64,000 bases of DNA. Source: Hyaloraphidium curvatum SAG 235-1. Its lineage: Eukaryota > Fungi > Monoblepharomycota. The stretch's first letter is position 1, and each line of letters begins with the position of its first letter. The position numbers were made by a program, and so were the translations under genes. This document shows positions 7,546 to 34,425 of the stretch, piece by piece. The stretch is from assembly GCA_025558095.1 (NCBI GenBank), contig JAIVFI010000001.1, positions 372,001 to 436,000 on the forward strand. Reading direction: 5' to 3'. The notes under the pieces are model-generated. The model did not search any database. It had not been told where the DNA came from and was given only the letters and a program-made list of their open reading frames with translations.

Positions 7546-10500
7546 TCAGGCTGTACATCGAAACTCTCTCTTCAGCCGCCGTATCCAGGGTATCGTGCCT
7601 GTAACGTTCAAACACAATGCCTTGCCCAGAGTCCCACGCTGCACCATTGCCCTCCTGTACAACGGTTGCCACCTCGTCGCGGCAGGAGCGGAAGCAGCTG
7701 CCGCTGCGTAATGCCCGTCCGCCTGGTCCTCAACGCCAAGTCCTTCCCAGTACATCCCGATCCACAAATGAAGCAATGAATTGCCGGGCAACTTCTGCAG
7801 ACGCTTCTCGAGATCCTCGTACGTTGCCAAACTCATCTGCGTAATGATGGTCTTGTGGTAATCGACGAGCTCCTCCAGAGGATAATCATTCGGATGCATC
7901 GTCCGCAGCATCGGGACCACCTCGGGATAACGCGTCATGTCCCTCTGCATCGACTTGGACTTGTACCGGTAGTAGAGCAGGAAGTCCGGGATCTTGTGGA
8001 CCCGCACGTCCGGCCGGATCCCTGACAACGAGATCCACATGTTCCAATCCTCGTTGCCCCACGGCAGCACCTCGGTGTAGCCGCCCACGGTTTCCCAATC
8101 CGCTTTCCGGTAGACCGTGTTGACCGGAAATTGTCCCGAGTACAGGGTTCCCTTCCTGGAGAAGTCCGGCGTGTGCCATTTCCAATCCGATTCGTAGAAG
8201 AACTGCTGGTTCGAGTAGATCATAGTGAGGGATGGATCCCTCGCAATGACGGCAGCGACGGAACGCAAGTAGTCCGGATGGAGATAGTCGTCCGCATCCA
8301 AAGCGCAAATCCACTCGCCGATCGCACGTTCGATGCCGTAGTTCCTGGCGGAAGACAGGCCTCCGTTCGGCTTCGTGTAGGTCCGGATGCGGTTCGAGGC
8401 AAATGTTCGCCGGTATTCGTCGGCATCTGCCTTGCATCGGTCCGTGCTGGCGTCATCGACGACGATCATCTCCCAATTCGTGAAAGTCTGCCCGACGACA
8501 CTGTTCAGAGCTTCGTACAGGAAGTGCGCTTGGTTGTAGCACGGTACAATCACGGATATGAAAGGCTGCAGAGATCAGACCAACGTCAGGAACACTGACT
8601 ACGAGGAATGCGCGGGCAACTCGCCTCCGAAGCACCCATGATTCGCGTGTCGGAGTGCGACTGCCCCGCATGGAACACGAACCAGGCGGTAAACACGGCG
8701 AGCGCAGTCGTTTGGATCCATGGCGCCTGAAACCATCGGCGACCTCGCCTGATGAAGCGATGGCGGACGAGAAGGACCCGCACACGCTCGAGAACGAATG
8801 TCAAAAGACTCCACAAGGTTACTCTGCAAGATACCGAGCGAACAATCAAATTCGATGCCGAGGAACGATAGCAGCCGGATAACTTACTGAAGGAGCAGCT
8901 GTCCTGGGGACGATGAGCGGCTGCGGTATGCCACAACCGAACGTGGTTGAAGCGGCAGTGCCAGCCATGGGTTCAACCCCGATTCACGGCACGACTTGCG
9001 CCACACGAGATTGAGAGAGCCGTCGTCCGTACTGAGAAAGATCCGAGTGGATCCACTCGTCCAGCAGAGGTGCCGTACGCGGAAAACCGTGCCTCGTTCT
9101 GTTGGTATCCTCTCGACGGCAATGGAGTACACGACAGACGTGTTCTCAATCAGGTTGCCAAGCCTAGACTCGTCTATGTGGTGCTCAAACGCGAACTCGA
9201 GAGTTTCGGAAGCCTCGTCGACTGCCAGCTCGGAATTCGGGGCCAGGGGCTCGAACCTGTTCCCTTTGCGCACGGAGACGCCTTTCGGCACGAAAGGCTG
9301 CGGGCGGTCCCACACTTCGACGAAGCTAAGCGCGTAGTTCCAAAGCCGCAGTCGCCGTGCGATTGCTCCTTGACCCGCCGCAGGAGCGTGAGCAGATACG
9401 GGAACCAAATCGAATTGAACGCTGTGCGCCGCAACATAACGGCCATCGATGAACACCGTGCCGATCGAAAACGTCCGTGATAGAACAAGCGTCAGGCGCA
9501 CCGTAGCACCGGCACGACTTTGGCCATCAATGGAAACAAGTGTTTGGCTCGAACCGAACTCGTGAAGAACAACAGTCAACAAGAACAGGCCATGCGCGCT
9601 TGGCCGCAAAGAAACGGCGATCGCTCTCGAGGGCGAAAACAAGATCTGGAAACTGCAAGGCTGCCGGGCGGATAAGTGGTCCGTGCACTGAATGTCTGCT
9701 GATATAGCGTCGAAACTGATGTGGCCGGGTTGATCACGCTGAGCCATCCCTATCCCGACCCACAGACAGGGCACTCCGCTCGTCTCATACCCGCTGTCAC
9801 AAACGGCAGAAAATCCGGTGCGAAGCACCTTCTCCAGTGCGACGCGAGTAGCGCGGAAAGCTCCCTCATCCCAAACAAGATCGACCAGGAGCTGATCACT
9901 TGATCCGAACACAGAAGAGGCGGGTGCTGGTGCGCCAAGTGCAAGGTTGGACACAGCCTCGACCGTCAACGGAGCTGCCGGGGACAAGTCAATCAACGCG
10001 GAGCGGATAAGAGAACATACTCACTTTCAAAGGTGCGATTCGCCAGCCAGGCCTCTGGCGGGGTCTTGGAAAAGATAAGCAGAGCTCCCAGGGTCATCCG
10101 TGTTTTTGCAAAGCGCTGCCGATCTTCCCCAAAGAGGACCGCGGTTCGTGTCCCAATCCAAAGCCCGAGCACACCTTCCGTTCGATCCAAAGGCGTGTGC
10201 GCTCTTCGAGAACCATGCACCCAAAGAGCCACTTCGTTGGCGCTGGCATCCATGGTCACGGCAACCGTAATCCAACCATTTTCATAGCTTCGAAGGCACC
10301 AATCAGAGCACGTGGCGCACGTGTAAAGCATGCACCAACCCATCGCGATCCAGCGGAGTGGAAGAGATGGGCTGAAACATTGACGGAAGCCCGAACTTGC
10401 CGAAAGCTCGATACTCGAGCTCCAGCGCAGAACCTGTCTTCAGCTTCCGGTATGCTGTAGACAAGCAGAGGAATGAATTGGTGGTTTCAACCGTCGCGAG

Positions 10501-24612: not shown

Positions 24613-24742
24613 CACACGACGACGATGAACTTTGTTAAAAAGACACACGACGACGATGAACTTTGCAATTAGCAGCAAACTCATGGTGTAACAGCGGCCA
24701 AGCCAGGGGCAGGTCCGGGTCACCAATACTATTCTTCTTCTT
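24613..24742 (+). mobile_element. Short LINE 3'-end insertion with internal duplication and CATTCT TSD
   Basis: CACACGACGACGATGAACTTTG occurs twice, followed by the LINE 3' UTR and TATTCTTCTTC tail; CATTCT at 24607-24612 and 24743-24748. Confidence 0.85.
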
Positions 24743-24913
24743 CATTCTGATTCCCGCTGATCTCGGCCGATCCGGGATCAGATCCTGGATCAGGTTTCCC
24801 GGGATAGAAAAGGCCCACCAAATGTACTGCCAAGTAGTCGTCAATCACCGCAGTTCGTCAGTGTTTACATTTGTCCTCGCCGTGCGGAATTTGTCTTCGG
24901 CGGGGTCCGAATC

Positions 24914-25124
24914 TGTTATTGGGGACGGATGGATGTGTTTGGAGTCTCTGGATCGAGTTGGAGTTGATCTTGGCATTGGAGCTGGACTTGGATGGGCGGA
25001 TAGTTTCTGGCTAGCAATTACCTAGGGACGTGGCCTCTTAGAAGGGAATAACGCAACAAACACCAGGAACGCCACCTGCCTCATTCGCACCTGTCTCTGG
25101 GCGCCTGTGACCAGGGGTCTTTGA
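24914..25124 (+). repeat. 5' LTR (TGTT...TTGA)
   Basis: Identical by eye to 31197-31407. Confidence 0.97.
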
Positions 25125-25138
25125 GATTAAGAGTCTCA
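25125..25138 (+). promoter_or_regulatory. Primer-binding site complementary to the tRNA-Lys(CUU) anticodon arm
   Basis: GATTAAGAGTCTCA is the reverse complement of TGAGACTCTTAATC. Confidence 0.85.
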
Positions 25139-25186
25139 ACTGCTCTGACACGTACCTGCTACCCCTGGAAGCCCGCCCGTGACAGG

Positions 25187-26563
25187 ATGACAGCCACCGA
25201 TGCCGACAAGCCCATCCTGCTCAACTCCGGTGAAAACATGGTCCAGTGGGACCGCAAGGCCCCCATCTACCTTAACAAGATTGGAGTGTACGAGTACGTC
25301 GTCAACGACGTCCTCAGCCTCGACTGGCAGCTCGAGCAAGCCCGCAAGAGAGCTGCTGAGCGGAGCACCGGTCCGGGGATGACCGACCAAGAGAAGGCAA
25401 CCATCCTTGCCGAGGAAGAGAAGACCGCGCGTACGATTCTTTCCGACTCCAAGTTTAGGGAGAAGGTCCAAAAGGCCTATGGCGAGCTCATGCTCATGCT
25501 CGACGACGTCCTCCAGGAGGCATTCGACGAGCCCAAGACGGCCCATGACCTCTGGAACGCGATTCACACCAAGTTCCGGGTCGGGAAAGCGCGTTTGGTA
25601 CACGCGTCCCAGATCCGCGTAAACAACTGGCAGTGGGATGCTTCAAAGACGGTGGACCAGAACTTCAACGAGTTGCTTAGTATCAAGTCAGAGAGGGCTG
25701 CGCACAAGAAGCCGCTCACAGACTACGAAGTGGCAATGATGGTGACGTTCTGCAAGGGTTTCCCGTTCGCAGAACTCCAGGGCTACTGGGGACGGGTGAT
25801 TGACGGTGCCAAGCACTTTGATGACAAGGGCAGCAGCAAGACGGATACATTTTCGTTCAACGGCATGCGTGATGCCGCTAACACAGCCCAAGCAAATGCA
25901 CCCCCGGCCGCGCCTGTCAAACTGACAGCTCCCGTTAATATCCCGGTACCTCCTGGATTCGGCCCCGGGTTCGCTGCGTATGGCACCGACTACCAGCAGC
26001 ACCAAGTTCCCCGTGGTGGTGGCAACCCCAGTCGGCCTCCGCAGCGCCCCTGGTACGAGCCCGGTCGCTACGCTCCGTACCCCAGCTACAGGCCGAGCGG
26101 CATGGCTCCTATACCAGGCCAGGGCCATGATACTCGGATGCGCGGCCGCGGGTTGGCACGTGGCGGCATGCGCGGAGGCCGCGGCTACTACCCCGCACTG
26201 AGGCCGATGGGCGGCCCAAGCTACCGCCCGGCTGGCGCTGCCGTTTGGAGGCCGGCTCCGGTGACCAGTGAGATCACCTGCCGCGAATGCGGCAAGCCGG
26301 GGCACGTGGCATCGGCGTGCCCCGACAAAAGGTGCCACAATTGCAACGGCAAGGGGCACGTACAGCGCGAGTGCCCGTCACCGCCCCAGCAGCCGTACGC
26401 CATGCTGGCAGATGCCCAGATGGAACACAGCGAGGGTGAGCATCGGGTGGTGATGTCTGGGCCGAGGTGCCCGCGCCGCGAAGGGGCCGCGGTGCTCGGC
26501 GCTTGGTTGAAGAGGAGGGCCGCGGGCCCCGCGTCGCGAAGGGCCGAGGTGCTAGACGCTTGA
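25187..26563 (+). CDS. gag: Gag (unspliced reading frame) with RGG-rich region and two CCHC zinc knuckles
   Basis: KTAHDLWNAIHTKF copia-gag motif; CRECGKPGHVASAC and CHNCNGKGHVQREC. Confidence 0.9.
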   Translation: MTATDADKPILLNSGENMVQWDRKAPIYLNKIGVYEYVVNDVLSLDWQLEQARKRAAERSTGPGMTDQEKATILAEEEKTARTILSDSKFREKVQKAYGELMLMLDDVLQEAFDEPKTAHDLWNAIHTKFRVGKARLVHASQIRVNNWQWDASKTVDQNFNELLSIKSERAAHKKPLTDYEVAMMVTFCKGFPFAELQGYWGRVIDGAKHFDDKGSSKTDTFSFNGMRDAANTAQANAPPAAPVKLTAPVNIPVPPGFGPGFAAYGTDYQQHQVPRGGGNPSRPPQRPWYEPGRYAPYPSYRPSGMAPIPGQGHDTRMRGRGLARGGMRGGRGYYPALRPMGGPSYRPAGAAVWRPAPVTSEITCRECGKPGHVASACPDKRCHNCNGKGHVQRECPSPPQQPYAMLADAQMEHSEGEHRVVMSGPRCPRREGAAVLGAWLKRRAAGPASRRAEVLDA

Positions 26564-26790
26564 AGAAGGGGGCCGCGGGCCCCGCGTCGCGAAGGGCCGA
26601 GGTGCCAGACGCTTGAGAGGAGGGCCGCGGGCCCAGCGCCGCGAAGGGGCCGCGGGCCCGGCGCGTGGAGTGTGGGCCGCGGGCTCCGCGTCGCGAGGGG
26701 CCGAGGGCCAGACGCTTGAAGAAGAGGGCTGCGGGCCCAGCGCCGCGAAGGGGCCGCGGGCCCGGCGCGTGGAGTGTGGGGCGCGGGTTA
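26458..26790 (+). repeat. GC-rich degenerate tandem repeat (~50-55 bp unit, ~6 copies) inside the copia element
   Basis: Recurring GCTTGAAGAAGGGGGCCGCGGGCCCCGCGTCGCGAAGGGCCGAGGTGCCAGAC and variants. Confidence 0.9.
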
Positions 26791-27225
26791 CTGGGGACCG
26801 ACGGTTGAGGTTCGCGCCCCTCGGCGCGTCGGCACGCGATCGGCTGATCGAACGTGCGTGCCGACGCGGGTGTAGCGCGCGCCCAACAGTCCAAACACTC
26901 TCGGAATTCCTCGCTTGACAAACACTAACTTCCGCCTCTCCTCTTTCGCTATCTAATTTCAATCTGCTTCGTACACTCTTCGTACACTCTCTGTTCATTT
27001 CGGTAAGGCGATACTGCTACCGAAGGTAACTCACCCGCTCCGCACCCAGCTCGCCCTTCATCGCAGCGTTGCCTGACAGCCTTCGGCTTCCTGGGATACG
27101 GCTCAATGCCCGGTGACAGTGAAGGAGCCGATTTCGGCTATGTCGGCTACGACCACGAGTCCGGCGGGGGAGCGACTTATGGCGAAGCTTTCGGAGCAAC
27201 CTACGGCGACGGCTTCGACAACTGA

Positions 27226-30200
27226 CTACGGAGCGGCGGGGAGGCCGCTGCGATCCCAGCCGTGACGGCCAATGCCGTTCCGGGGGAGGCTCTCGACGGC
27301 GGCATGGTTCAAGCTCAACATGCTCGGGCGTACATCAACCATGTCCGGGCAAACACCTGTGATTTCTTCTTCGATTCTGGCGCAAGTCGCATCTCTACGA
27401 ACATCCTCGACGACCTGGACAACGTTCGTTCGATACCCAAGTTCTCGGTGCATGGATTGACCGGACCTGTGGAGGTGTCAAAGGCCGGCACCATGTACAT
27501 TCGCCTCCGCGGTGACGGACCCATTGTTCGCCTTGATAACGTCCTCTTCATGCCAAGCACGCCTTGCCGCCTGTTCTCAGAAACGGCATTGGCCGCCGCC
27601 GGCGTTCGTTCAAAGAACCGCTACCTTGCTGACAAGCAGATGGAGAAGCAGCTGTACCTTGCGGACGGGACGGAGCTGTGCACTCTTTCGCAGCAAAACG
27701 GCGTGTTCCCGATGCCGATCGAGGTCGTCAAGCCGGGGTCAACGTCGCAGGCCATGTGGGGACTCACCGACGCGGATTTAATCCGACTGCGCGGGGTACG
27801 CATGTCACGTCTCTACGACCGTCACCTGTGGCATGCCCGGTGTGCGCACGCTCACATTGAGCGCATCCGGATAGCGCAGAGGTCGGGCGCAGTGCTTGGC
27901 CTTGAGAACGTCGATCTGGGCCCCGAGTCGGAGGTTATCGAGTGCGACGTCTGCCTGCGCGCCAAGCTGACGACTGCGCCGTTCCGCCCTTCGATGCGCG
28001 AGCACGTCAAGGACGTCATGGATCTCTGGCACGTCGATCTCAAGGGACCGGTTGACGTCACATCTGTTCATGGCCACCGCTACTGGATGGATGTCAAGGA
28101 CGAATGGAGCCAGCAGCTCTGGTCGATCCCGCTCGAGACCAAGGATCAAGCAGCGCCACTCCTTCAACAGCTCATTGTGTACGCAGAGACGCAGACGGGC
28201 AAGCGCCTCAAGCACCTCCAGTCTGACCAGGGCACTGAGCTCGGGCGGTGGGACGCAAGGGAGCTTGGCTGGTTCCAGACCTGGCTCCGCAAACGAGGCA
28301 CTCACTTCCGGGTCTCAATAGCCGATACGCCTCAACAGAATGCGGTACCCGAACGCGAGCATCGCTCGCAGGTCGAAGGGGTGCTTGCGCTCTGCATCCA
28401 GGCTGCCGTCGACAAGCGCTTCTGGAACTACGCTCTCGCATACAAGACTGAGGTCCGCAACATGCTTCCAACGGTGAAGACGATGCAACGGGGCGCCAAC
28501 GGAGCGGTCACCACGCCGCATGAGCTGTGGACAGGGACTAAACCCGACCTGTCACGTCTCCGCACGTTCGGGTCAGAGTGCTGGTATGGCATCCTCCCCA
28601 GCCAGCGCAAGGCTCTGGACGACCGTGCACACCGTGCAATCTTCCTCGGTTTCCCGAAGCACCTGAAGGCGTACACCTTGCTGGATCTGACCACAGGCAA
28701 GATTGTCCATGCGCGCTCAGTGGTCTTCAACGAGCGCTACTCTAAACGCTCGCCCGGCTCCTTCCACGAGATTGATGCGCTGGGAAGGCATCGTCCTTTT
28801 GCTCTCGTGCCTCCCCGGTTTCCTCCTTGGCTCTCCAAGCCGGTAGATGCAGCGCCCGATGAAGACAGCGATGACGATCAGCAGACACCACCAAGGGATG
28901 CGGGGACGGACATTCAGGAACCTGCTCAGCGCAACGAGGCCCCAGAGGCGTACGAGTGGGAGCTTCTCGAGGAGGAGATTGAGTATCCTGAGGCTGCGCA
29001 AGGGGAGGGAGCACACGGCAACGATGATGATGATGGGGTGCAATGGCATGCCGAGCACCCTTGGCCAGATGACGGTCTCCAGGACCCCCTTGCCATGCCT
29101 TCGACTGTCACCCCGTTGACATTCTCTCCTCCTTTCCGCTTCCCAGCCTTCGAGACGTGGCGCATACCAGGTACCAGCGCCCCGCACCCGGCGAGCCCAG
29201 TGACACTGCTGTCGGTGCACGATGTCACCGTTCCGCGCACATACAACGAATCGCAGAGATCACCGCATGCGGCTCAGTGGGAGGAAGCGCGGCAGGAGGA
29301 GAACAAGTCGATTCTTGAGATGGGTGTGGTCGAGGAGACGGAACTCCCTGCTGGTGACGAGGACAAGGTGGTGCCCTCGCACTACGTCTACGACGTCAAG
29401 AAGGACCAGAACAACAACGTTACGCGCTTCAAGGCACGCTTGGTGGCGGATGGAAACCGCCAATCCGAGCAAACATACTACGATACGTTCGCTGCCGTTC
29501 CTAACCAAGTCGTTTTCCGCCTCTTCCTTCTTCTTGTTGCCACGCTGGGACTCCTCTGTGATCACTGGGACATCAAGACGGCGTTTCTGCATGCTCCGCT
29601 GGACTACAGTGTCTACATCAGGCCGCCTCCGGGATGGCGGTTCCTCAAGGAGTCTTCCTCGCGCACGGTGCTTCGGCTGCTGAAGAGTCTCTATGGATTA
29701 CGGCAAGCGATGCGCTTGTTCCTTGCAATGCTTGATCATTTCCTTCGCCAGGCTGGATTCGTGAAGCTGGCCTCCGAAAGCTGTCTCTACGTGCGCTTCA
29801 CGGCCGGCCGCTTTATGATCGTCTTTGTCTACGTGGACGACTTACTGGTTGCTGCCACCTCACAGCTGGAGATCGATGAGTTGTTTGCCAGCCTCAAGCA
29901 GCATTTCAACATCAACTCCCTGGGCCCTGTCACTTACTGCTTGGGCGTGCACATCCGTCGCGACACCGGCACCGGTACAATCACGTTGTCGCAGACGGCG
30001 TACATCGACCGCGTCCTCCGCGAATTTGCATTCACGCGTGATGTTCCCAGCAAGGAGACAAAGTCTGCTCTCACGCCAATGCGACCGGATGCCCTCCAGG
30101 GGCTGCGCCCATTCGACCCCGCGGTGTTTGACAGCCTGCCAACGAAGATCCAAGACGACGTCAAAAGTTTCAACTACAAGGGCCTGATTGGCTCTCTACT

Positions 30201-30873
30201 TTGGATTGCCATCACAACGCGACCAGACATTGCTTTTGCGGTTATCTTTCTTTCTCGCTTTGCCAACAGCTTTGGGCCTCTTCACATCAAGGCGCTTCGC
30301 GATGTTTTGCGCTACCTGCGCCGCACCCGTACCTATGGACTTGTTCTTGGTCGTCGTCCTGCGTCTGGTGATCGCTTGGATCTCTGCGCATATGCGGATG
30401 CCGACTTTGCTGGTTGTGTGATGACCCGCAAGTCGACAACCGGTCTTGTCATCCTCATGGGTGCCTCCAGCATTGCCTGGCTGACCAAGAGGCAATCCGT
30501 GGTTGCACAGTCTACTACTGAAGCCGAGTATGTTGCTATGGCTCACGCAGTGCGCAACATCCTCTGGCTCCGCTCCATCTTGCAGGAACTTGGCCTTCCG
30601 CGGACCACACCGACCCGGCTCTTCGAGGACAACAAGTCTGCCGAGCAGCTGGCTCGCGACCCCAAGTTCCATGAGCGGACGAAGCACATCGACATCAAGT
30701 ATCATTTGGTTCGTGACACCGTGCAGGCTGGAGTCATTGAGCCTGCACGGGTTGTGTCTGAGGACAACTTTGGGGACGGCCTCACTAAGCCCCTGCCTCC
30801 GGCCCCTTTTGAACTCTTCCGTGAACGTGTTGGTGTTGTTGATCTGGATCCGGGTTCGGTTTCCAGTGCGTGA
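27226..30873 (+). CDS. pol: Pol polyprotein (PR-IN-RT-RNase H), open from the codon after TGA 27223-27225
   Basis: FFFDSGAS; LWHARCAH...CDVC; HVDLKGP/QSDQGTE/PEREHR; RFKARLVA, WDIKTAFL, YVDDLL; YADADFAG, STTEAEY, RTKHIDIKYH. Confidence 0.97.
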   Translation, partial: LRSGGEAAAIPAVTANAVPGEALDGGMVQAQHARAYINHVRANTCDFFFDSGASRISTNILDDLDNVRSIPKFSVHGLTGPVEVSKAGTMYIRLRGDGPIVRLDNVLFMPSTPCRLFSETALAAAGVRSKNRYLADKQMEKQLYLADGTELCTLSQQNGVFPMPIEVVKPGSTSQAMWGLTDADLIRLRGVRMSRLYDRHLWHARCAHAHIERIRIAQRSGAVLGLENVDLGPESEVIECDVCLRAKLTTAPFRPSMREHVKDVMDLWHVDLKGPVDVTSVHGHRYWMDVKDEWSQQLWSIPLETKDQAAPLLQQLIVYAETQTGKRLKHLQSDQGTELGRWDARELGWFQTWLRKRGTHFRVSIADTPQQNAVPEREHRSQVEGVLALCIQAAVDKRFWNYALAYKTEVRNMLPTVKTMQRGANGAVTTPHELWTGTKPDLSRLRTFGSECWYGILPSQRKALDDRAHRAIFLGFPKHLKAYTLLDLTTGKIVHARSVVFNERYSKRSPGSFHEIDALGRHRPFALVPPRFPPWLSKPVDAAPDEDSDDDQQTPPRDAGTDIQEPAQRNEAPEAYEWELLEEEIEYPEAAQGEGAHGNDDDDGVQWHAEHPWPDDGLQDPLAMPSTVTPLTFSPPFRFPAFETWRIPGTSAPHPASPVTLLSVHDVTVPRTYNESQRSPHAAQWEEARQEENKSILEMGVVEETELPAGDEDKVVPSHYVYDVKKDQNNNVTRFKARLVADGNRQSEQTYYDTFAAVPNQVVFRLFLLLVATLGLLCDHWDIKTAFLHAPLDYSVYIRPPPGWRFLKESSSRTVLRLLKSLYGLRQAMRLFLAMLDHFLRQAGFVKLASESCLYVRFTAGRFMIVFVYVDDLLVAATSQLEIDELFASLKQHFNINSLGPVTYCLGVHIRRDTGTGTITLSQTAYIDRVLREFAFTRDVPSKETKSALTPMRPDALQGLRPFDPAVFDSLPTKIQDDVKSFNYKGLIGSLLWIAITTRPDIAFAVIFLSRFANSFGPLHIKALRDVLRYLRRTRTYGLVLGRRPASGDRLDLCAYADADFAGCVMTRKSTTGLVILMGASSIAWLTKRQSVVAQSTTEAEYVAMAHAVRNILWLRSILQELGLPRTTPTRLFEDNKSAEQLARDPKFHERTKHIDIKYHLVRDTVQAGVIEPARVVSEDNFGDGLTKPLPPAPFELFRERVGVVDLDPGSVSSA

Positions 30874-31185
30874 TGGGCCTGAGGCCAGCGTGCTGCGAGC
30901 TGGACCCTACCAGGAATCTCTGCCCATGATGAGCCGGAGGCTAGTGGGCGGCCATTCCTTGGTTTCTGGGGGAGGATGCTTACCTGTATGTCTTTCTGGG
31001 GGAGCTTTGGATTTTTCTTGTATGTTGTGTTTGTGGGGGAGTTTTCTTTATGTATGGCGATTGGATCGCCCGGTCTTGGGGGGAGGAGTGAGTGAGTGAT
31101 GGGAGCCTGGGTAGGCTACCTGGGGAGCAATCCCGGGGCGTGGAGGAGCATGCGATGGGGGACTCCACTCGATCCACTCGCCTCC

Positions 31186-31196
31186 AAATGGGGGAG
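31186..31196 (+). promoter_or_regulatory. Polypurine tract
   Basis: AAATGGGGGAG abutting the 3' LTR. Confidence 0.85.
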
Positions 31197-31407
31197 TGTT
31201 ATTGGGGACGGATGGATGTGTTTGGAGTCTCTGGATCGAGTTGGAGTTGATCTTGGCATTGGAGCTGGACTTGGATGGGCGGATAGTTTCTGGCTAGCAA
31301 TTACCTAGGGACGTGGCCTCTTAGAAGGGAATAACGCAACAAACACCAGGAACGCCACCTGCCTCATTCGCACCTGTCTCTGGGCGCCTGTGACCAGGGG
31401 TCTTTGA
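31197..31407 (+). repeat. 3' LTR
   Basis: Identical to the 5' LTR; followed by the GAATC TSD. Confidence 0.97.
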
Positions 31408-31599
31408 GAATCCATCAAGTCCGATCCTTCTGAGATGTCCCCCTCGGGAGACAGTCTCCCTCAAGCGAATCTCAAGGTCAAACCCAGGCTACAACTAACT
31501 CTACTTCGGACCTTCCGAGTCCTGTAAGATTGAACCACTTGTGCAGCAGGTTAAAGCGCTAGGCCCGGCTTGACCTGGTCCGGCATACTGTCCCCTGCC

Positions 31600-31905
31600 G
31601 CAACACAGAGCAACGCCAGAAGCTGCAGACTAGACTGGAAGCACTGAGCCGCGAGTGGAACTTGGAGACCTGGCTCTGGACTCTCAGCATCAAGGAGTTC
31701 GAGCCCACGATCAAAGTGAGGCGGCAAAAGGAGAAGGCCCTCAACTCCATTGCCAGCTTCATCTCAAAGTCCATGAAGGACAGAAAACGGGGAAAATGAA
31801 AAAGATGCACGACGACAAACTTCAAATTAGCAGCAAACTTATGGTGTAACGGCGGCCAAGCCAGGGGCAGGTCCGCCGGGTCACCAATACTATTCTATTC
31901 TATTC
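31600..31905 (+). mobile_element. Older 3'-end fragment (~300 bp) of the LINE with (TATTC)3 tail
   Basis: Inverted, moderately diverged copy of ~18890-19190. Confidence 0.9.
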
Positions 31906-31962: not shown

Positions 31963-34425
31963 CTATTGCACCATGCGGTGGTCTAAGCTGTACAGGTAGC
32001 TCTTGAATGTCAGGTGCAGAGCAAGTTCAGATCCATCATCATCAGCCCCATTCGCCTTCTTCGGCCCGCCTTTTTTTGCAAGGGAATCAACCACATGTTC
32101 CGGTACACCTTGCCTGAAGCGCACTTTGTACTTCCCACTCTGTCCGAAGGAGCCTTCCAGGACTCCCTTGACACCTACAGCCCCGGAGAAATGAATCATC
32201 ACGGCAGAGGCTTCACAAAACGGCCCACAGAGAGGCTTACCGTTACTGGTCGTAACAAACATGCCAATGAAGGGTTGCAAGACCGTTTCTCTCTTGAATA
32301 GACCCTTTCCAATGACAGAGTATCCATCCACAACCTGGAGGAATGATCAGCACAGAACAGCAGCACAGCAAGCTGGATTCGTACCCGTTCAATTGCACCA
32401 GTCCGCTGCTTCCATTTGAAAACCTTCAACCTCGGGAGTTCCTGCATTCTGTAGTCTTTAGACGAGTAAACTTGAAGAAGGTGTCCGTGGAAAGCCAGAC
32501 GGCAGGTCTTGTCGGCTGTGGCCAGAGTCAATGACCATAGCATGCAAACCATTGCCACTGGGCCCACTGATGTCGGAGTCAAGTTTTGAGGCAATGTAGA
32601 GAGATCCTGGCAATGCCAGCACCGGAACCTCAAGCTCAACCAAAGCAAAGCAAGAATCCGCATCGGGAGATGCCAAGTACAGGTACTCGTTCAGAATATG
32701 GAAGCTCTGGGGCTCCAACGGCTGTTGCTCTGGGTCTGTGACAAATGAGTGAGTTGCGTGATAGATCCCCACCAGGTCGACGCAGCTCACCCTGTTTGGA
32801 TGGATCTTGACCAAAGAACGTCACTAATCCAAGGACTGTCTCGTGCCCAAGACTAAAATGAAACTTTGCCTTTGATGCAACTGGCCCCTTGAAGTACTTG
32901 ACCTTCTGCACACTGACAATGGCTGCGTGGATTGTTGTCACTGCTCCCACGGATGCAGCCAGCCCCTTTTCCATGACATCAGGGTCAAGCTGGCTGACAC
33001 AGAGGCCCACTCGGTCCCCCTGGCAGATAGTGACCTATCAGCACGGGGACAATTCACGCTGCTTGCCCCCCACCTGTGCTGCAACAGTGACGGGCTTGCG
33101 GAACATCTGCATCGACTTGATCTTCTTGGTAACCTTTGCAGAGGGCAGCTCGATGGTCTGAGGAGGAAAGTGAGACGAGCAAGCCCACGTCGGCGTGTCG
33201 ACACGTGCCTCTCCAACTGCTACCTTGCCCCGAAGGACAGTGCCCGTCCTGCACGTGGTCAGCTAAATGTGCAAAGGCCAGGAGACAACAAGCCTACATA
33301 ACCGTGCCTTGTCCCTTGATGGCAAAGCAGTGGTCCACAGCAAACACAAACGAGCCATCCGTTGTCCTTGCAGGCACCTTCAGTGCGTTGCTGATTGTCG
33401 AAATGAGCTGCTCTAGGCCTATGCTAGTGACGGTATCCGACGTATCCGACTCCGCGCCAACATTCGCGGCCTGCAACTGGGACATGAGCGAGCTAAACAA
33501 CCAGCCAGCATCTGAATGCCCACCACAGGTACGATTGGGCAGAAGGCAAACGGGGTGTCCGCAAGCGTCTTCCGGAGCTTTGCAACGACCTGAGCACAGC
33601 TCATTCTTCAACGATCCCGAACGGCAATGTCCGTCCCTTTCACCTTGGAGATCTTGACGTCTCGGTCGGCCTCCTCAAATATGTCAACCTTGTTCAGTGC
33701 AATGACAAGGTCCTTCCCCGTGATCTCGGCCAGCACCAGGGACTGGCACCAATCAGCGTTGCTGCGTGAACGTGGAAGAAAGGCCTCACCTCCGCTGTTT
33801 GCGTTTGAATGCCTAAAGGAAAGGTGGGTCAGAACTCGCCTTGGTGGACTACCAGTGCCCGTTCCCACCTTTTCCAGCGTCGATCACGAGCAGCATGAGA
33901 TCAATGATTTGCGATCCTAGGTGTCTGTTGAACCGGACAACCCACTCTGTAGCAGGAACAGCCTTACCTCCGATCACCGTTCGAACGAAAGCGGCATGTC
34001 CTGGGCAATCGACCAAGGTAACCTTGCACCGCAGCCCGTAAAGCCAGGAAACGGAATGGAGTGCCACAAACGATCACCTGCAGATCATCGATACCGGCAT
34101 CACGAAACACTGGTGGAGGGTCCAAGTAGAAGGCGGAGAATCCCAGGTCAAGCGTGATCCCGCGACGACGGGACTCTTCCGCCAGAATGAGCAACTACGT
34201 CATCTTGGACACGATGACGTTCCATTCCCACCGGGATGCTTGTCGAACGCAGCGGTCGACGCGACAGTGCTAAGCGCCCTTGCTGGCGACGCATTCAAAC
34301 TGTGCCCGCCTCGGCTGGACCACGTCCAACTAACCAAGACTCGTCTTCCCGCTGTCAACGTGTCCCATGATTCCGATCGAGACATTGAACGGAGGCTTGG
34401 ACCCTCCGCCCGAAGCTGGCGGCAT
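31963..34425 (-). CDS. EEFSEC: Selenocysteine-specific translation elongation factor (multi-exon)
   Basis: FNVSIGIMGHVDSGKTSL|ARALSTVASTAAFDKHP|ESRRRGITLDLGFSAF; TLVDCPGHA; SQIIDLMLLVIDAGK; FAVDHCFAIKGQGTVM; C-terminal GVLEGSFGQSGKYKV and LHLTFKSYLY. Confidence 0.93.

What the first reader, a model, noticed from the sequence alone, without database searches (positions are those of the whole stretch)
24914..31407. Young intact copia element that appears to need both splicing and stop-codon readthrough to make Gag-Pol
Seen: identical LTRs, a perfect TSD and an uninterrupted 1200-aa pol, so the element is recent and not decayed. Yet gag (frame 2, stop 26563) and pol (frame 1, open from 27226) are ~660 nt apart. 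Splice signals rejoin gag to a 48-codon frame-1 extension ending in UGA-CUA directly in frame with pol. The element also has a half-tRNA-Lys PBS and TG...GA ends. Known: most copia elements have a single gag-pol ORF or a frameshift; Drosophila copia and Arabidopsis EVD splice to make Gag only; Ogre (gypsy) splices to make Pol; Candida Tca2 uses UGA readthrough. Inference: unspliced RNA is the genome and Gag template, while spliced RNA gives Gag' and, by readthrough, Gag-Pol. I do not know of this combination being described.
Basis: partly seen in the sequence, partly recalled or inferred. Interest (0 to 1): 0.9.

Follow-up and report, generated by a model that had tools for sequence, protein, structure and literature searches.

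The report
Copia element with intron-split gag-pol
A recently inserted copia-type jumping gene keeps an intron-like spacer and then a stop codon between its coat gene and its enzyme gene, so making the enzymes seems to need RNA splicing plus reading through the stop; copy comparison supports this unusual layout, but no RNA data do.

Summary
Window 24914-31407 is an intact Ty1/copia element with identical 211-nt LTRs and a GAATC target duplication. Its primer site matches the genome's own tRNA-Lys(CUU) anticodon arm. It has a 458-codon gag and an open 1215-codon pol that starts 662 nt after the gag stop.

Ten copies in three sublineages share the layout, and four full copies have 99.5-100% identical LTR pairs. 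Spacer length varies (564-713 nt, not in threes), yet the donor and acceptor phases always restore one frame. The donor hexamer GTGAGC and the branch motif AACTCAC are identical to those of native introns next door. The in-frame stop is TGA in five copies and TAA in five, always followed by CTAC.

Three in-frame acceptors fit (27007, 27049, 27079), and I could not decide between them. Native introns are only 47-60 nt long. The single public run showed no junction. An RNA hairpin after the stop has no statistical support. Pol made from an internal start or promoter, as suggested by work on Tca2, remains a live rival.

This scan already followed up the same family on another copy, with the same reading.

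Verdict: the architecture is real, conserved and recently active; the mechanism is inferred (about 0.5). It is a new variant of known retroelement expression strategies.

The parts
24909..24913 (+). Left target-site duplication, GAATC
   Evidence: The same 5 nt lie at 31408-31412.
24914..25124 (+). 5' LTR, 211 nt, with termini TGTT...TTTGA (TG...GA rather than TG...CA)
   Evidence: 100% identical to 31197-31407. The ends are shown. Sublineage C copies end in AACA instead.
25125..25138 (+). Primer-binding site, complementary to the anticodon stem-loop of mature tRNA-Lys(CUU). Complementarity runs to 17 nt from 25122.
   Evidence: The tRNA gene carries a 15-nt intron (L065 1481-1569). The 13-nt core pattern was found only at copies of this element.
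25187..26435 (+). gag exon: 416 codons plus 1 nt, with two CCHC knuckles
   Evidence: Translation, Pfam. Exon length modulo 3 is 1 in all four full copies.
26436..26441 (+). Candidate 5' splice site, GTGAGC (context GAG G|GTGAGC)
   Evidence: Kept in all 10 copies and in the diverged relic L043. The hexamer is identical to the donor of a native eEFSec intron.
26436..26563 (+). Gag tail read from unspliced RNA: 42 codons, then TGA
   Evidence: The tail is 24, 42 or 59 codons long and lies in different frames in other copies, so it is not conserved as protein.
26436..27079 (+). Intron-like spacer at its largest extent. It is 572 nt if the acceptor is 27007 and 614 nt if it is 27049.
   Evidence: Hypervariable, with indels of any length. 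Measured from the donor to the first acceptor candidate it is 564-713 nt, and 137 nt in L043.
26459..26787 (+). GC-rich tandem array with a 52-nt unit (about 6 copies) inside the spacer
   Evidence: TRF. Copy number differs between copies; L043 has one unit.
26891..27005 (+). Pyrimidine-rich tract without AG, containing CACTAAC and TTCAT branch-like motifs
   Evidence: The AG-free run is 116-166 nt with 66-72% pyrimidine in three sequence-diverged versions. It is not uniquely long within the element.
27006..27007 (+). In-frame acceptor candidate 1, in the context TTCATTTCGGTAAG|G
   Evidence: The pol-frame ORF opens exactly here in all 11 copies. AAG acceptors occur in 2 of 14 native introns.
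27048..27049 (+). In-frame acceptor candidate 2, in the context AACTCAC-N12-CAG|
   Evidence: The same AACTCAC motif precedes the CAG acceptor of a native intron, which has 10 nt between them. The AG is absent in sublineage B.
27078..27079 (+).
   Evidence: Kept in all copies and in L043. A contig of run X1 ends exactly at 27079, which is anecdotal.
27080..27222 (+). Gly/Tyr/Asp-rich extension in the pol frame. The frame is already open from 27007.
   Evidence: Open in all copies. Within the family the indels are +3 and -24 nt. Variable sites by codon position are 10/4/14.
27223..27228 (+). In-frame stop with its context, TGA CTA
   Evidence: TGA in 5 copies and TAA in 5, at the same codon, always followed by CTAC. 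The TGACTACG motif is kept in L043.
27232..27249 (+). GC hairpin AGCGGC-GGGGAG-GCCGCT, starting 6 nt after the stop
   Evidence: Invariant in the 10 copies. There is no covariation, and folding is no better than for shuffled sequence (z = -0.53).
27226..30873 (+). pol ORF of 1215 codons (PR, IN, RT/RH). Strong protein constraint starts near the conserved AUG at 27304.
   Evidence: Pfam. Intact ORFs of 1185-1231 codons occur in at least 5 other copies. Codon-position pattern is 3/6/15 from 27304.
31186..31196 (+). Polypurine tract, AAATGGGGGAG
   Evidence: It abuts the 3' LTR and is identical in four copies.
31197..31407 (+). 3' LTR
31408..31412 (+). Right target-site duplication, GAATC

Best explanation
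This is an autonomous, recently active Ty1/copia retrotransposon of a chytrid-like fungus. Earlier notes of this scan name the fungus Hyaloraphidium curvatum.

Proposed mechanism (inferred, not shown):
- The full-length unspliced RNA is the replication template. It can be translated only into Gag, which then carries a short, unconserved tail read from the intron.
- A fraction of transcripts is spliced from the donor at 26436 to one of three in-frame acceptors (27007, 27049 or 27079). This removes 572-644 nt and fuses gag to a Gly/Tyr/Asp-rich linker in the pol frame.
- That linker ends in a leaky stop (UGA-CUA, or UAA-CUA in sister lineages). Occasional readthrough gives Gag-Pol.

Shown: the anatomy, its conservation in young copies, the phase logic and the match of the signals to native introns.
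Inferred: splicing itself, which acceptor is used, and readthrough.
For: 1. At least three sublineages, 13-18% apart in DNA, keep the layout and have LTR pairs 99.5-100% identical. Intact pol ORFs occur in at least 5 further copies.

2. Spacer length modulo 3 is 2, 0, 2, 2 in four full copies. The exon-1 phase is always 1 and the acceptor-to-stop phase always 2. Only removal of the spacer gives one frame in every copy.

3. The spacer is hypervariable, with indels of any size, and the Gag tail is not conserved. From 27008 onward, indels within the family are multiples of three (+3, -24).

4. The donor GTGAGC and the branch motif AACTCAC are identical to those of native eEFSec introns. TTCAT and CTAAC motifs and CAG or AAG acceptors fit native usage (gene identity).

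5. The donor, GGTAAG, AACTCAC, the CAG acceptor and TGACTACG all survive in the much more diverged relic L043.

6. The stop is kept as TGA or TAA, with CTAC after it, in 10 of 10 copies. UGA-CU(A) alone drives readthrough in Ustilago maydis and in human cells (PMC4207609).

7. Splicing restores a normal copia spacing of about 120-145 residues between the zinc knuckle and the DSG active site.
Against: - No spliced junction was seen. The only run holding the element gave no joints, and one of its contigs crosses the donor unspliced.
- All 14 native introns examined are 47-60 nt, so this intron would be about 10 times longer.
- No intron-less copy exists among the copies that hold both flanks, so there is no fossil of the spliced RNA.
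- Donor conservation among the 10 copies is not independent evidence. It lies in a 96-99% identity block that looks recombinational.
- The 26 codons between the stop and AUG 27304 show no codon-position bias (6/4/6). Strong constraint begins at that AUG.
- UAA, found in half the copies, reduced readthrough in the U. maydis assay (PMC4207609).
- The hairpin has no covariation or stability support.
- In Tca2, the junction sequence alone did not give readthrough in S. cerevisiae, and it had promoter activity (PMC2194720).
Confidence: 0.5

Rival explanations
1. Pol is made independently of Gag. Either a subgenomic transcript starts in the CT-rich 3' part of the spacer (about 26890-27000), possibly with the native-sized 47-nt unit 27003-27049 as a 5'-UTR intron, or ribosomes enter internally. 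Translation would start at the conserved AUG 27304, or at 27106 followed by readthrough.
For: - Strong codon-position constraint begins at AUG 27304, which is conserved in all copies and in L043.
- GTAAGG (27003) ... AACTCAC ... CAG (27049) is a 47-nt unit that matches native intron size, donor and branch.
- The Tca2 gag-pol junction has promoter activity (PMC2194720).
- Spacer length is free to vary.
Against: - It does not explain why the gag-end donor survives in L043. It also does not explain why the donor and acceptor phases always match, or why the pol frame stays open for about 100 codons upstream of AUG 27304 with only 3n indels and one conserved stop.
- A Pol made apart from Gag would lack the usual route into particles. 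In Tca2 itself, Pol followed the LTR promoter (PMC2194720).
- Sublineage B lacks the AG at 27049.
Confidence: 0.22
2. Splicing occurs, but the stop is passed by something other than near-cognate readthrough. Candidates are selenocysteine insertion at UGA, RNA editing of the stop, termination followed by reinitiation at AUG 27304, or a second small intron.
For: - The genome carries an eEFSec gene right next to the element.
- AUG 27304 lies 78 nt after the stop.
- Earlier scan notes list other in-frame stops in retroelements of this genome (unchecked).
Against: - Half the copies have TAA, which selenocysteine insertion cannot decode.
- No SECIS or other Rfam match lies in the element.
- No conserved GT...AG pair brackets the stop.
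- By general knowledge of eukaryotic translation, reinitiation after an ORF of about 470 codons is not expected. This was not tested here.
Confidence: 0.08
3. The layout is a tolerated defect. These copies make no Pol themselves and are moved in trans by another element.
For: There are no RNA or protein data. A second, unrelated copia family exists in the genome.
Against: - Long intact pol ORFs with strong synonymous bias are kept in several sublineages with identical LTRs.
- The nearest other copia family is only about 25% identical in pol, so trans-mobilisation is unlikely to preserve these ORFs.
Confidence: 0.04

Closest known systems
Ogre (Ty3/gypsy, legumes)
   Same: An intron is retained in all genomic copies, and its removal is needed to join coding regions of the polyprotein. 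Only unspliced RNA is copied back into DNA. (Cited through PMC12786077; the original paper, PMC2596294, was not held.)
   Different: Ogre is a gypsy element and its intron lies inside pol. Here the element is copia, the intron sits at the gag/PR boundary, and a stop codon follows.
Drosophila copia and Arabidopsis EVD/Evade (Ty1/copia)
   Same: Same superfamily, with a 5' splice site at the end of gag. Splicing is used to set the Gag to Pol ratio (PMC5580714).
   Different: In those elements the unspliced RNA encodes Gag-Pol in one ORF, and splicing (with early termination in EVD) makes a Gag-only RNA. Here the logic is reversed: unspliced RNA can give only Gag, and the spliced RNA would be the only route to Pol.
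Candida albicans Tca2 (Ty1/copia)
   Same: gag and pol lie in one frame separated by a UGA, and Pol is translated from the LTR-driven RNA (PMC2194720). By my recollection, not checked here, Tca2 is also primed by a tRNA fragment.
   Different: Tca2 has no intron. Its junction alone did not support readthrough in S. cerevisiae, and its bypass mechanism is unresolved.
UGA-CU(A) cellular readthrough motif (Ustilago maydis, human MDH1/LDHB)
   Same: The same stop plus three nucleotides, which is sufficient for readthrough in a fungus (PMC4207609, PMC4359377).
   Different: There it adds a peroxisomal signal to enzymes. Here it would gate Gag-Pol, and half the copies use UAA.
Gammaretrovirus (MLV) gag-UAG-pol readthrough
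   Same: An in-frame stop between gag and pol with a GC-rich structure a few nucleotides downstream (my knowledge of the family).
   Different: The MLV pseudoknot is experimentally required. Here the hairpin has no statistical or covariation support, and no intron is involved in MLV Gag-Pol.

Membership tests
Ty1/copia LTR retrotransposon (Pseudoviridae-like) | pol domain order: protease, then integrase, then reverse transcriptase/RNase H | tested here: met
   Pol_BBD at residues 48-126, rve at 266-366, SH3_retrovirus at 436-505 and RVT_2 at 712-939 of the pol ORF.
Ty1/copia LTR retrotransposon (Pseudoviridae-like) | Direct LTRs with a 5-bp target duplication, a PBS next to the 5' LTR and a PPT next to the 3' LTR | tested here: met
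   LTRs 100% identical, TSD GAATC, PBS complementary to tRNA-Lys(CUU), PPT AAATGGGGGAG. The termini are TG...GA, not TG...CA.
Ty1/copia LTR retrotransposon (Pseudoviridae-like) | Copia-type Gag with a CCHC knuckle | tested here: met
   zf-CCHC at 37.2 bits with two knuckles. Retrotran_gag_2 scores 24.2 bits, just under its cut-off of 27.
Spliceosomal intron | GT...AG boundaries with a branch motif like those of the host's own introns | tested here: met
   The GTGAGC donor and the AACTCAC branch motif are identical to native eEFSec introns. Candidates for the acceptor are CAG and AAG.
Spliceosomal intron | Length within the host's range | tested here: not met
   572-644 nt against 47-60 nt for 14 native introns of one neighbouring gene. 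The sample is small.
Spliceosomal intron | The exon-exon junction is seen in RNA | tested here: inconclusive
   One run (contigs only, kind guessed) showed no joint. One contig crosses the donor unspliced and another ends at 27079.
Programmed stop-codon readthrough site | An in-frame stop in a leaky context, conserved among relatives, with an open frame beyond it | tested here: met
   TGA or TAA plus CTAC in 10 of 10 copies, with the frame open into PR. The context is known to be leaky (PMC4207609).
Programmed stop-codon readthrough site | A stimulatory downstream RNA structure supported by covariation | tested here: inconclusive
   The hairpin at 27232-27249 is invariant. None of 33 predicted pairs shows a compensatory change, and z = -0.53.
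Programmed stop-codon readthrough site | The readthrough product is detected | not testable with these tools
   This needs a reporter assay, ribosome profiling or proteomics.
Half-tRNA-primed copia elements (copia, Ty5, Tca2 type) | The PBS is complementary to an internal part of a tRNA rather than its 3' CCA end | tested here: met
   14-17 nt are complementary to the anticodon stem-loop of the spliced tRNA-Lys(CUU) of this genome.

The most novel reading that the evidence does not exclude
A copia lineage in an early-diverging fungus has split the two jobs of its RNA. The intron-bearing RNA is the genome and the Gag message. Only a spliced, non-replicating RNA can yield Gag-Pol, and then only by stop-codon readthrough. 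That makes two attenuators in series. I found this combination described for no LTR retroelement in three full-text literature searches.
Probability: 0.45. Interest if true: 0.75.

Novelty: new variant of a known kind. Interest (0 to 1): 0.6.

Why it matters
Retroelements must make much more Gag than Pol and must also keep some RNA for packaging. The known solutions are frameshifting, readthrough, and splicing that yields a Gag-only RNA. Ogre is the one described case where splicing is needed for the polyprotein.

A copia family in which the replicating RNA cannot encode Pol at all would be a new arrangement, with Pol needing splicing plus readthrough. It would bear on three questions:
- how translation and packaging pools of RNA are kept apart;
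- how an intron is kept through reverse transcription;
- how leaky stops are used in early-diverging fungi.

Primers across 26300-27400 would test it directly.

Tried and rejected
- RNA evidence. One run (X1) holds the element, and laying it gave no joints. Its kind is only guessed. Its total of 27 Mb of contigs fits either a transcriptome or low-coverage DNA.
- The contig ending at 27079. I do not count it as evidence of splicing. It is a single contig with an adapter at its other end.
- Relatives elsewhere. The nearest pol in two very large protein libraries is only 34-37% identical, and the gag C-terminus finds nothing. The layout could therefore not be compared across species.
- Readthrough structure. 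There is no covariation and no excess stability. Rfam shows nothing and no SECIS.
- L043 as proof that the stop was once a sense codon. I rejected this. The better alignment keeps TGACTACG followed by a 7-nt insertion, and L043 is a truncated relic.
- Donor conservation among the 10 copies as independent evidence. I down-weighted it because the region lies in a 96-99% identity block that looks recombinational.
- The AG-free tract as a statistical signal. Comparably long AG-free runs occur elsewhere in the element.
- A second intron around the stop. No conserved GT...AG pair brackets it.
- Further copies.
- Joined model. Only phases were computed and exons were searched by reference.


Full report
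**1. What is there**

Window 24914-31407 is a complete LTR retrotransposon.
- The two 211-nt LTRs are identical.
- Both ends are flanked by GAATC. The termini read TGTT...TTTGA.
- gag starts at 25187 and has two CCHC knuckles. In unspliced sequence it stops at 26561-26563.
- pol is open for 1215 codons from 27226 to 30873. Its domain order is the copia order: protease-like barrel, integrase, SH3, RVT_2.
- The 662 nt between the gag stop and the pol frame hold a GC-rich tandem array with a 52-nt unit.
- The purine tract AAATGGGGGAG abuts the 3' LTR.

**2. Primer site**

The 14 nt after the 5' LTR (17 nt if the last three LTR bases are counted) are the exact complement of TGAGA-CTCTTAA-TCTCA. 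That is the anticodon stem-loop of a tRNA-Lys(CUU). The tRNA gene lies on contig 26 of the same genome and carries a 15-nt intron after position 37. The match is therefore to the spliced tRNA. The 13-nt core pattern occurs in the genome only at copies of this element. This confirms the 'half-tRNA' reading.

**3. The family**

The genome (31.9 Mb, 55 contigs) holds at least ten copies with the gag-pol junction, plus a much more diverged, truncated relic, L043.

The copies fall into three sublineages that differ by 13-18% in DNA.
- Four full copies have LTR pairs 99.5-100% identical: contigs C1, C30, C24 and C37.
- At least five further copies keep pol ORFs of 1185-1231 codons.

The layout therefore belongs to lineages that have moved recently. 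It is not decay.

Identity along the element is mosaic. Blocks of 96-99% alternate with blocks of 50-85%, which suggests recombination between lineages. One such block, 25994-26653, covers the donor. For that reason, conservation of the donor among the ten copies is not independent evidence.

**4. Evidence that the spacer is an intron**

(a) *Phase.* In all four full copies the gag exon length is 1 modulo 3, and the distance from the first acceptor candidate to the stop is 2 modulo 3. The spacer length itself is 2, 0, 2, 2 modulo 3. In unspliced RNA, gag and pol are therefore in different relative frames in different active copies. Only removing the spacer gives the same frame everywhere.

(b) *Variability.* The spacer is hypervariable: 564-713 nt, with indels of any size and a variable repeat number. 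The Gag tail read from it is 24, 42 or 59 codons long, in different frames. From 27008 onward, the only indels within the family are +3 and -24 nt.

(c) *Native signals.* I derived 14 introns of the neighbouring gene from reading-frame continuity. That gene is an eEFSec homologue (Pfam euk_SelB_III, eEFSec_4th and GTP_EFTU; alignment to human eEFSec).
- Donors are GTGAGC, GTGAGG, GTAAGG, GTGGGA and similar.
- Branch motifs are CTGAC, CTGAT, CTCAT, AACTCAC and TTGAA, 9-20 nt before the acceptor.
- Acceptors are mostly CAG, twice TAG and twice AAG.
- The element's donor G|GTGAGC is identical to a native one. Its AACTCAC is identical to a native branch motif.

These intron boundaries are my inference from protein continuity. 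They are not annotation.

(d) *The relic.* L043 is only about 72-79% identical in DNA here. It still has GTGAGCATC, a spacer with a single repeat unit, GGTAAGG, GTAACTCACC, CTGCCAG|CTTTCGG and TGACTACG.

(e) *Spacing.* Removing the spacer leaves about 120-145 residues between the last zinc knuckle and the DSG active site. By my own knowledge of copia polyproteins this is an ordinary distance.

**5. Which acceptor**

Three AGs give an in-frame join.
- *27007* (TTCAT-N-GGTAAG|G). This is the first AG after a pyrimidine-rich, AG-free tract of 116-166 nt in three diverged versions of the spacer. The pol-frame ORF opens exactly there in all eleven copies.
- *27049* (AACTCAC-N12-CAG|). Its geometry looks native, but the AG is missing in sublineage B, which includes a copy with identical LTRs.
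- *27079* (TTCAT CGCAG ... TGACAG|). It is kept in all copies and sits just before the well-conserved AFGFLGYG motif.

Codon-position patterns do not settle whether 27010-27078 is coding (5/5/7).

In run X1, one contig runs from an adapter at 26908 through 27007 and 27049 and ends exactly at 27079. If X1 is RNA this hints at 27079. It is a single contig, and I give it little weight.

My rough odds are 27079 about 0.45, 27007 about 0.3, 27049 about 0.1. The acceptors may be used in alternation. All three lead to the same downstream frame.

**6. The stop**

After the linker comes one stop at the same codon in all ten copies. It is TGA in five and TAA in five, always followed by CTAC. The frame then runs into the protease without further stops or indels.

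UGA followed by CU(A) is sufficient for efficient readthrough in Ustilago maydis and in human cells. In the same assay UAA was weaker (PMC4207609).

Other routes past the stop look less likely.
- Selenocysteine is unlikely, although the genome has eEFSec. TAA cannot be decoded that way, and no SECIS-like match was found.
- No conserved GT...AG pair brackets the stop.
- A frameshift would be counterproductive, because the linker and pol share a frame.

The GC hairpin that starts 6 nt after the stop is invariant, so it carries no covariation signal. It folds no better than shuffled sequence.

**7. What weakens the model**

- No junction was seen. X1 gave no joints, and one contig of a sublineage-B copy crosses the donor unspliced. 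Whether X1 is RNA is a guess by the tool.
- The intron would be about ten times the native length.
- The 26 codons between the stop and the conserved AUG 27304 evolve without codon-position bias (6/4/6). Constraint is strong from that AUG on (3/6/15).
- The unit GTAAGG(27003)...AACTCAC...CAG(27049) is a perfect native-sized 47-nt intron. It could belong to a transcript that starts in the CT-rich end of the spacer.
- For Tca2, the closest copia with gag-UGA-pol, the junction alone gave no readthrough in S. cerevisiae and showed promoter activity, although Pol followed the LTR promoter (PMC2194720).

Independent initiation of pol therefore stays a serious rival, at about 0.2.

**8. Comparison with what is known**

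- Plant LTR elements are said generally to lack introns, with Ogre and EVD as the exceptions (PMC12786077).
- In EVD and in Drosophila copia, splicing produces a Gag-only RNA, and the unspliced RNA encodes Gag-Pol (PMC5580714). Here the logic is the reverse.
- Ogre needs splicing for its polyprotein, but it is a gypsy element with the intron inside pol.
- Tca2 has the in-frame UGA but no intron.

I found no description of the combination in three full-text searches. The nearest pol in two very large protein libraries is only 34-37% identical. The gag C-terminus finds nothing. The layout could therefore not be traced in other species.

This scan had already followed up another copy of the same family in this genome and reached the same reading, also without RNA data.

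**9. Verdict**

The architecture is real, conserved and recently active, and the comparative evidence favours 'splice, then read through'. I give the joint mechanism about 0.5.
- It is a new variant of known retroelement expression strategies.
Exons were handled by reference and only phases were computed.

Noticed in passing
L065 1481-1569 (G000 C26 about 487480-487570), with a second gene on the opposite strand near C26 486993-487013: There is a divergent pair of tRNA-Lys(CUU) genes. The one read here (L065) carries a 15-nt intron after position 37; the second diverges right after the anticodon, so it probably has one too. ARAGORN in bacterial mode missed both.
   Followed up: partly
L045 (G000 C29 308828-312691), locus positions 8-1500: A second, unrelated copia family is present (about 25% identity in pol). 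Its gag is split over two frames at locus positions 643-646. Gag and pol lie in one frame, separated by TGA and TAA five codons apart. This may be another recoding or intron case, or a decayed copy.
   Followed up: partly
L043 (G000 C23 about 350470-351100, minus strand): This is a truncated relic of a diverged sister lineage. Its spacer has only one repeat unit (137 nt from GT to the first acceptor candidate), which suggests the family's long spacer grew by minisatellite expansion. A 7-nt insertion after TGACTACG and a deletion in the linker leave a chance open frame.
   Followed up: yes
window 24667-24717 and 31825-31875: A 51-nt direct repeat (96% identical) lies about 200 nt before and about 420 nt after the element. 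The insertion site may lie in a locally duplicated or repeated sequence.
   Followed up: no
window 31963-34400, minus strand: The neighbouring gene is an eEFSec homologue (Pfam euk_SelB_III, eEFSec_4th). It has at least 14 very short introns (47-60 nt). One appears to be GC-AG (GCACGT...CAG, about 33204-33154). Two use AAG acceptors.
   Followed up: partly
window 24914-31407 compared with L002, L003 and L004: Identity between sublineages is mosaic. Blocks of several hundred nucleotides at 96-99% alternate with blocks at 50-85%. This pattern is expected from recombination between co-packaged RNAs of different lineages.
   Followed up: partly
L002 locus 1501-1715 and 7830-8044, compared with window 25118-25124: Sublineage C LTRs end in ...GGGGAACA AAG, which gives canonical TGTT...AACA inverted termini. 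This copy and sublineage B end in ...GGGGTCTTTGA (TG...GA). The last 7 nt of the LTR were therefore replaced between lineages. Copies L002, L003 and L004 show no recognisable target duplication.
   Followed up: partly
G000 C15 423857-429436 and C2 near 663739: Two copies break at the same element position (window equivalent about 27258-27260). In the C15 copy the element sequence resumes about 5.6 kb upstream, which suggests a nested insertion. The C2 copy may be a duplicate of the same event.
   Followed up: no
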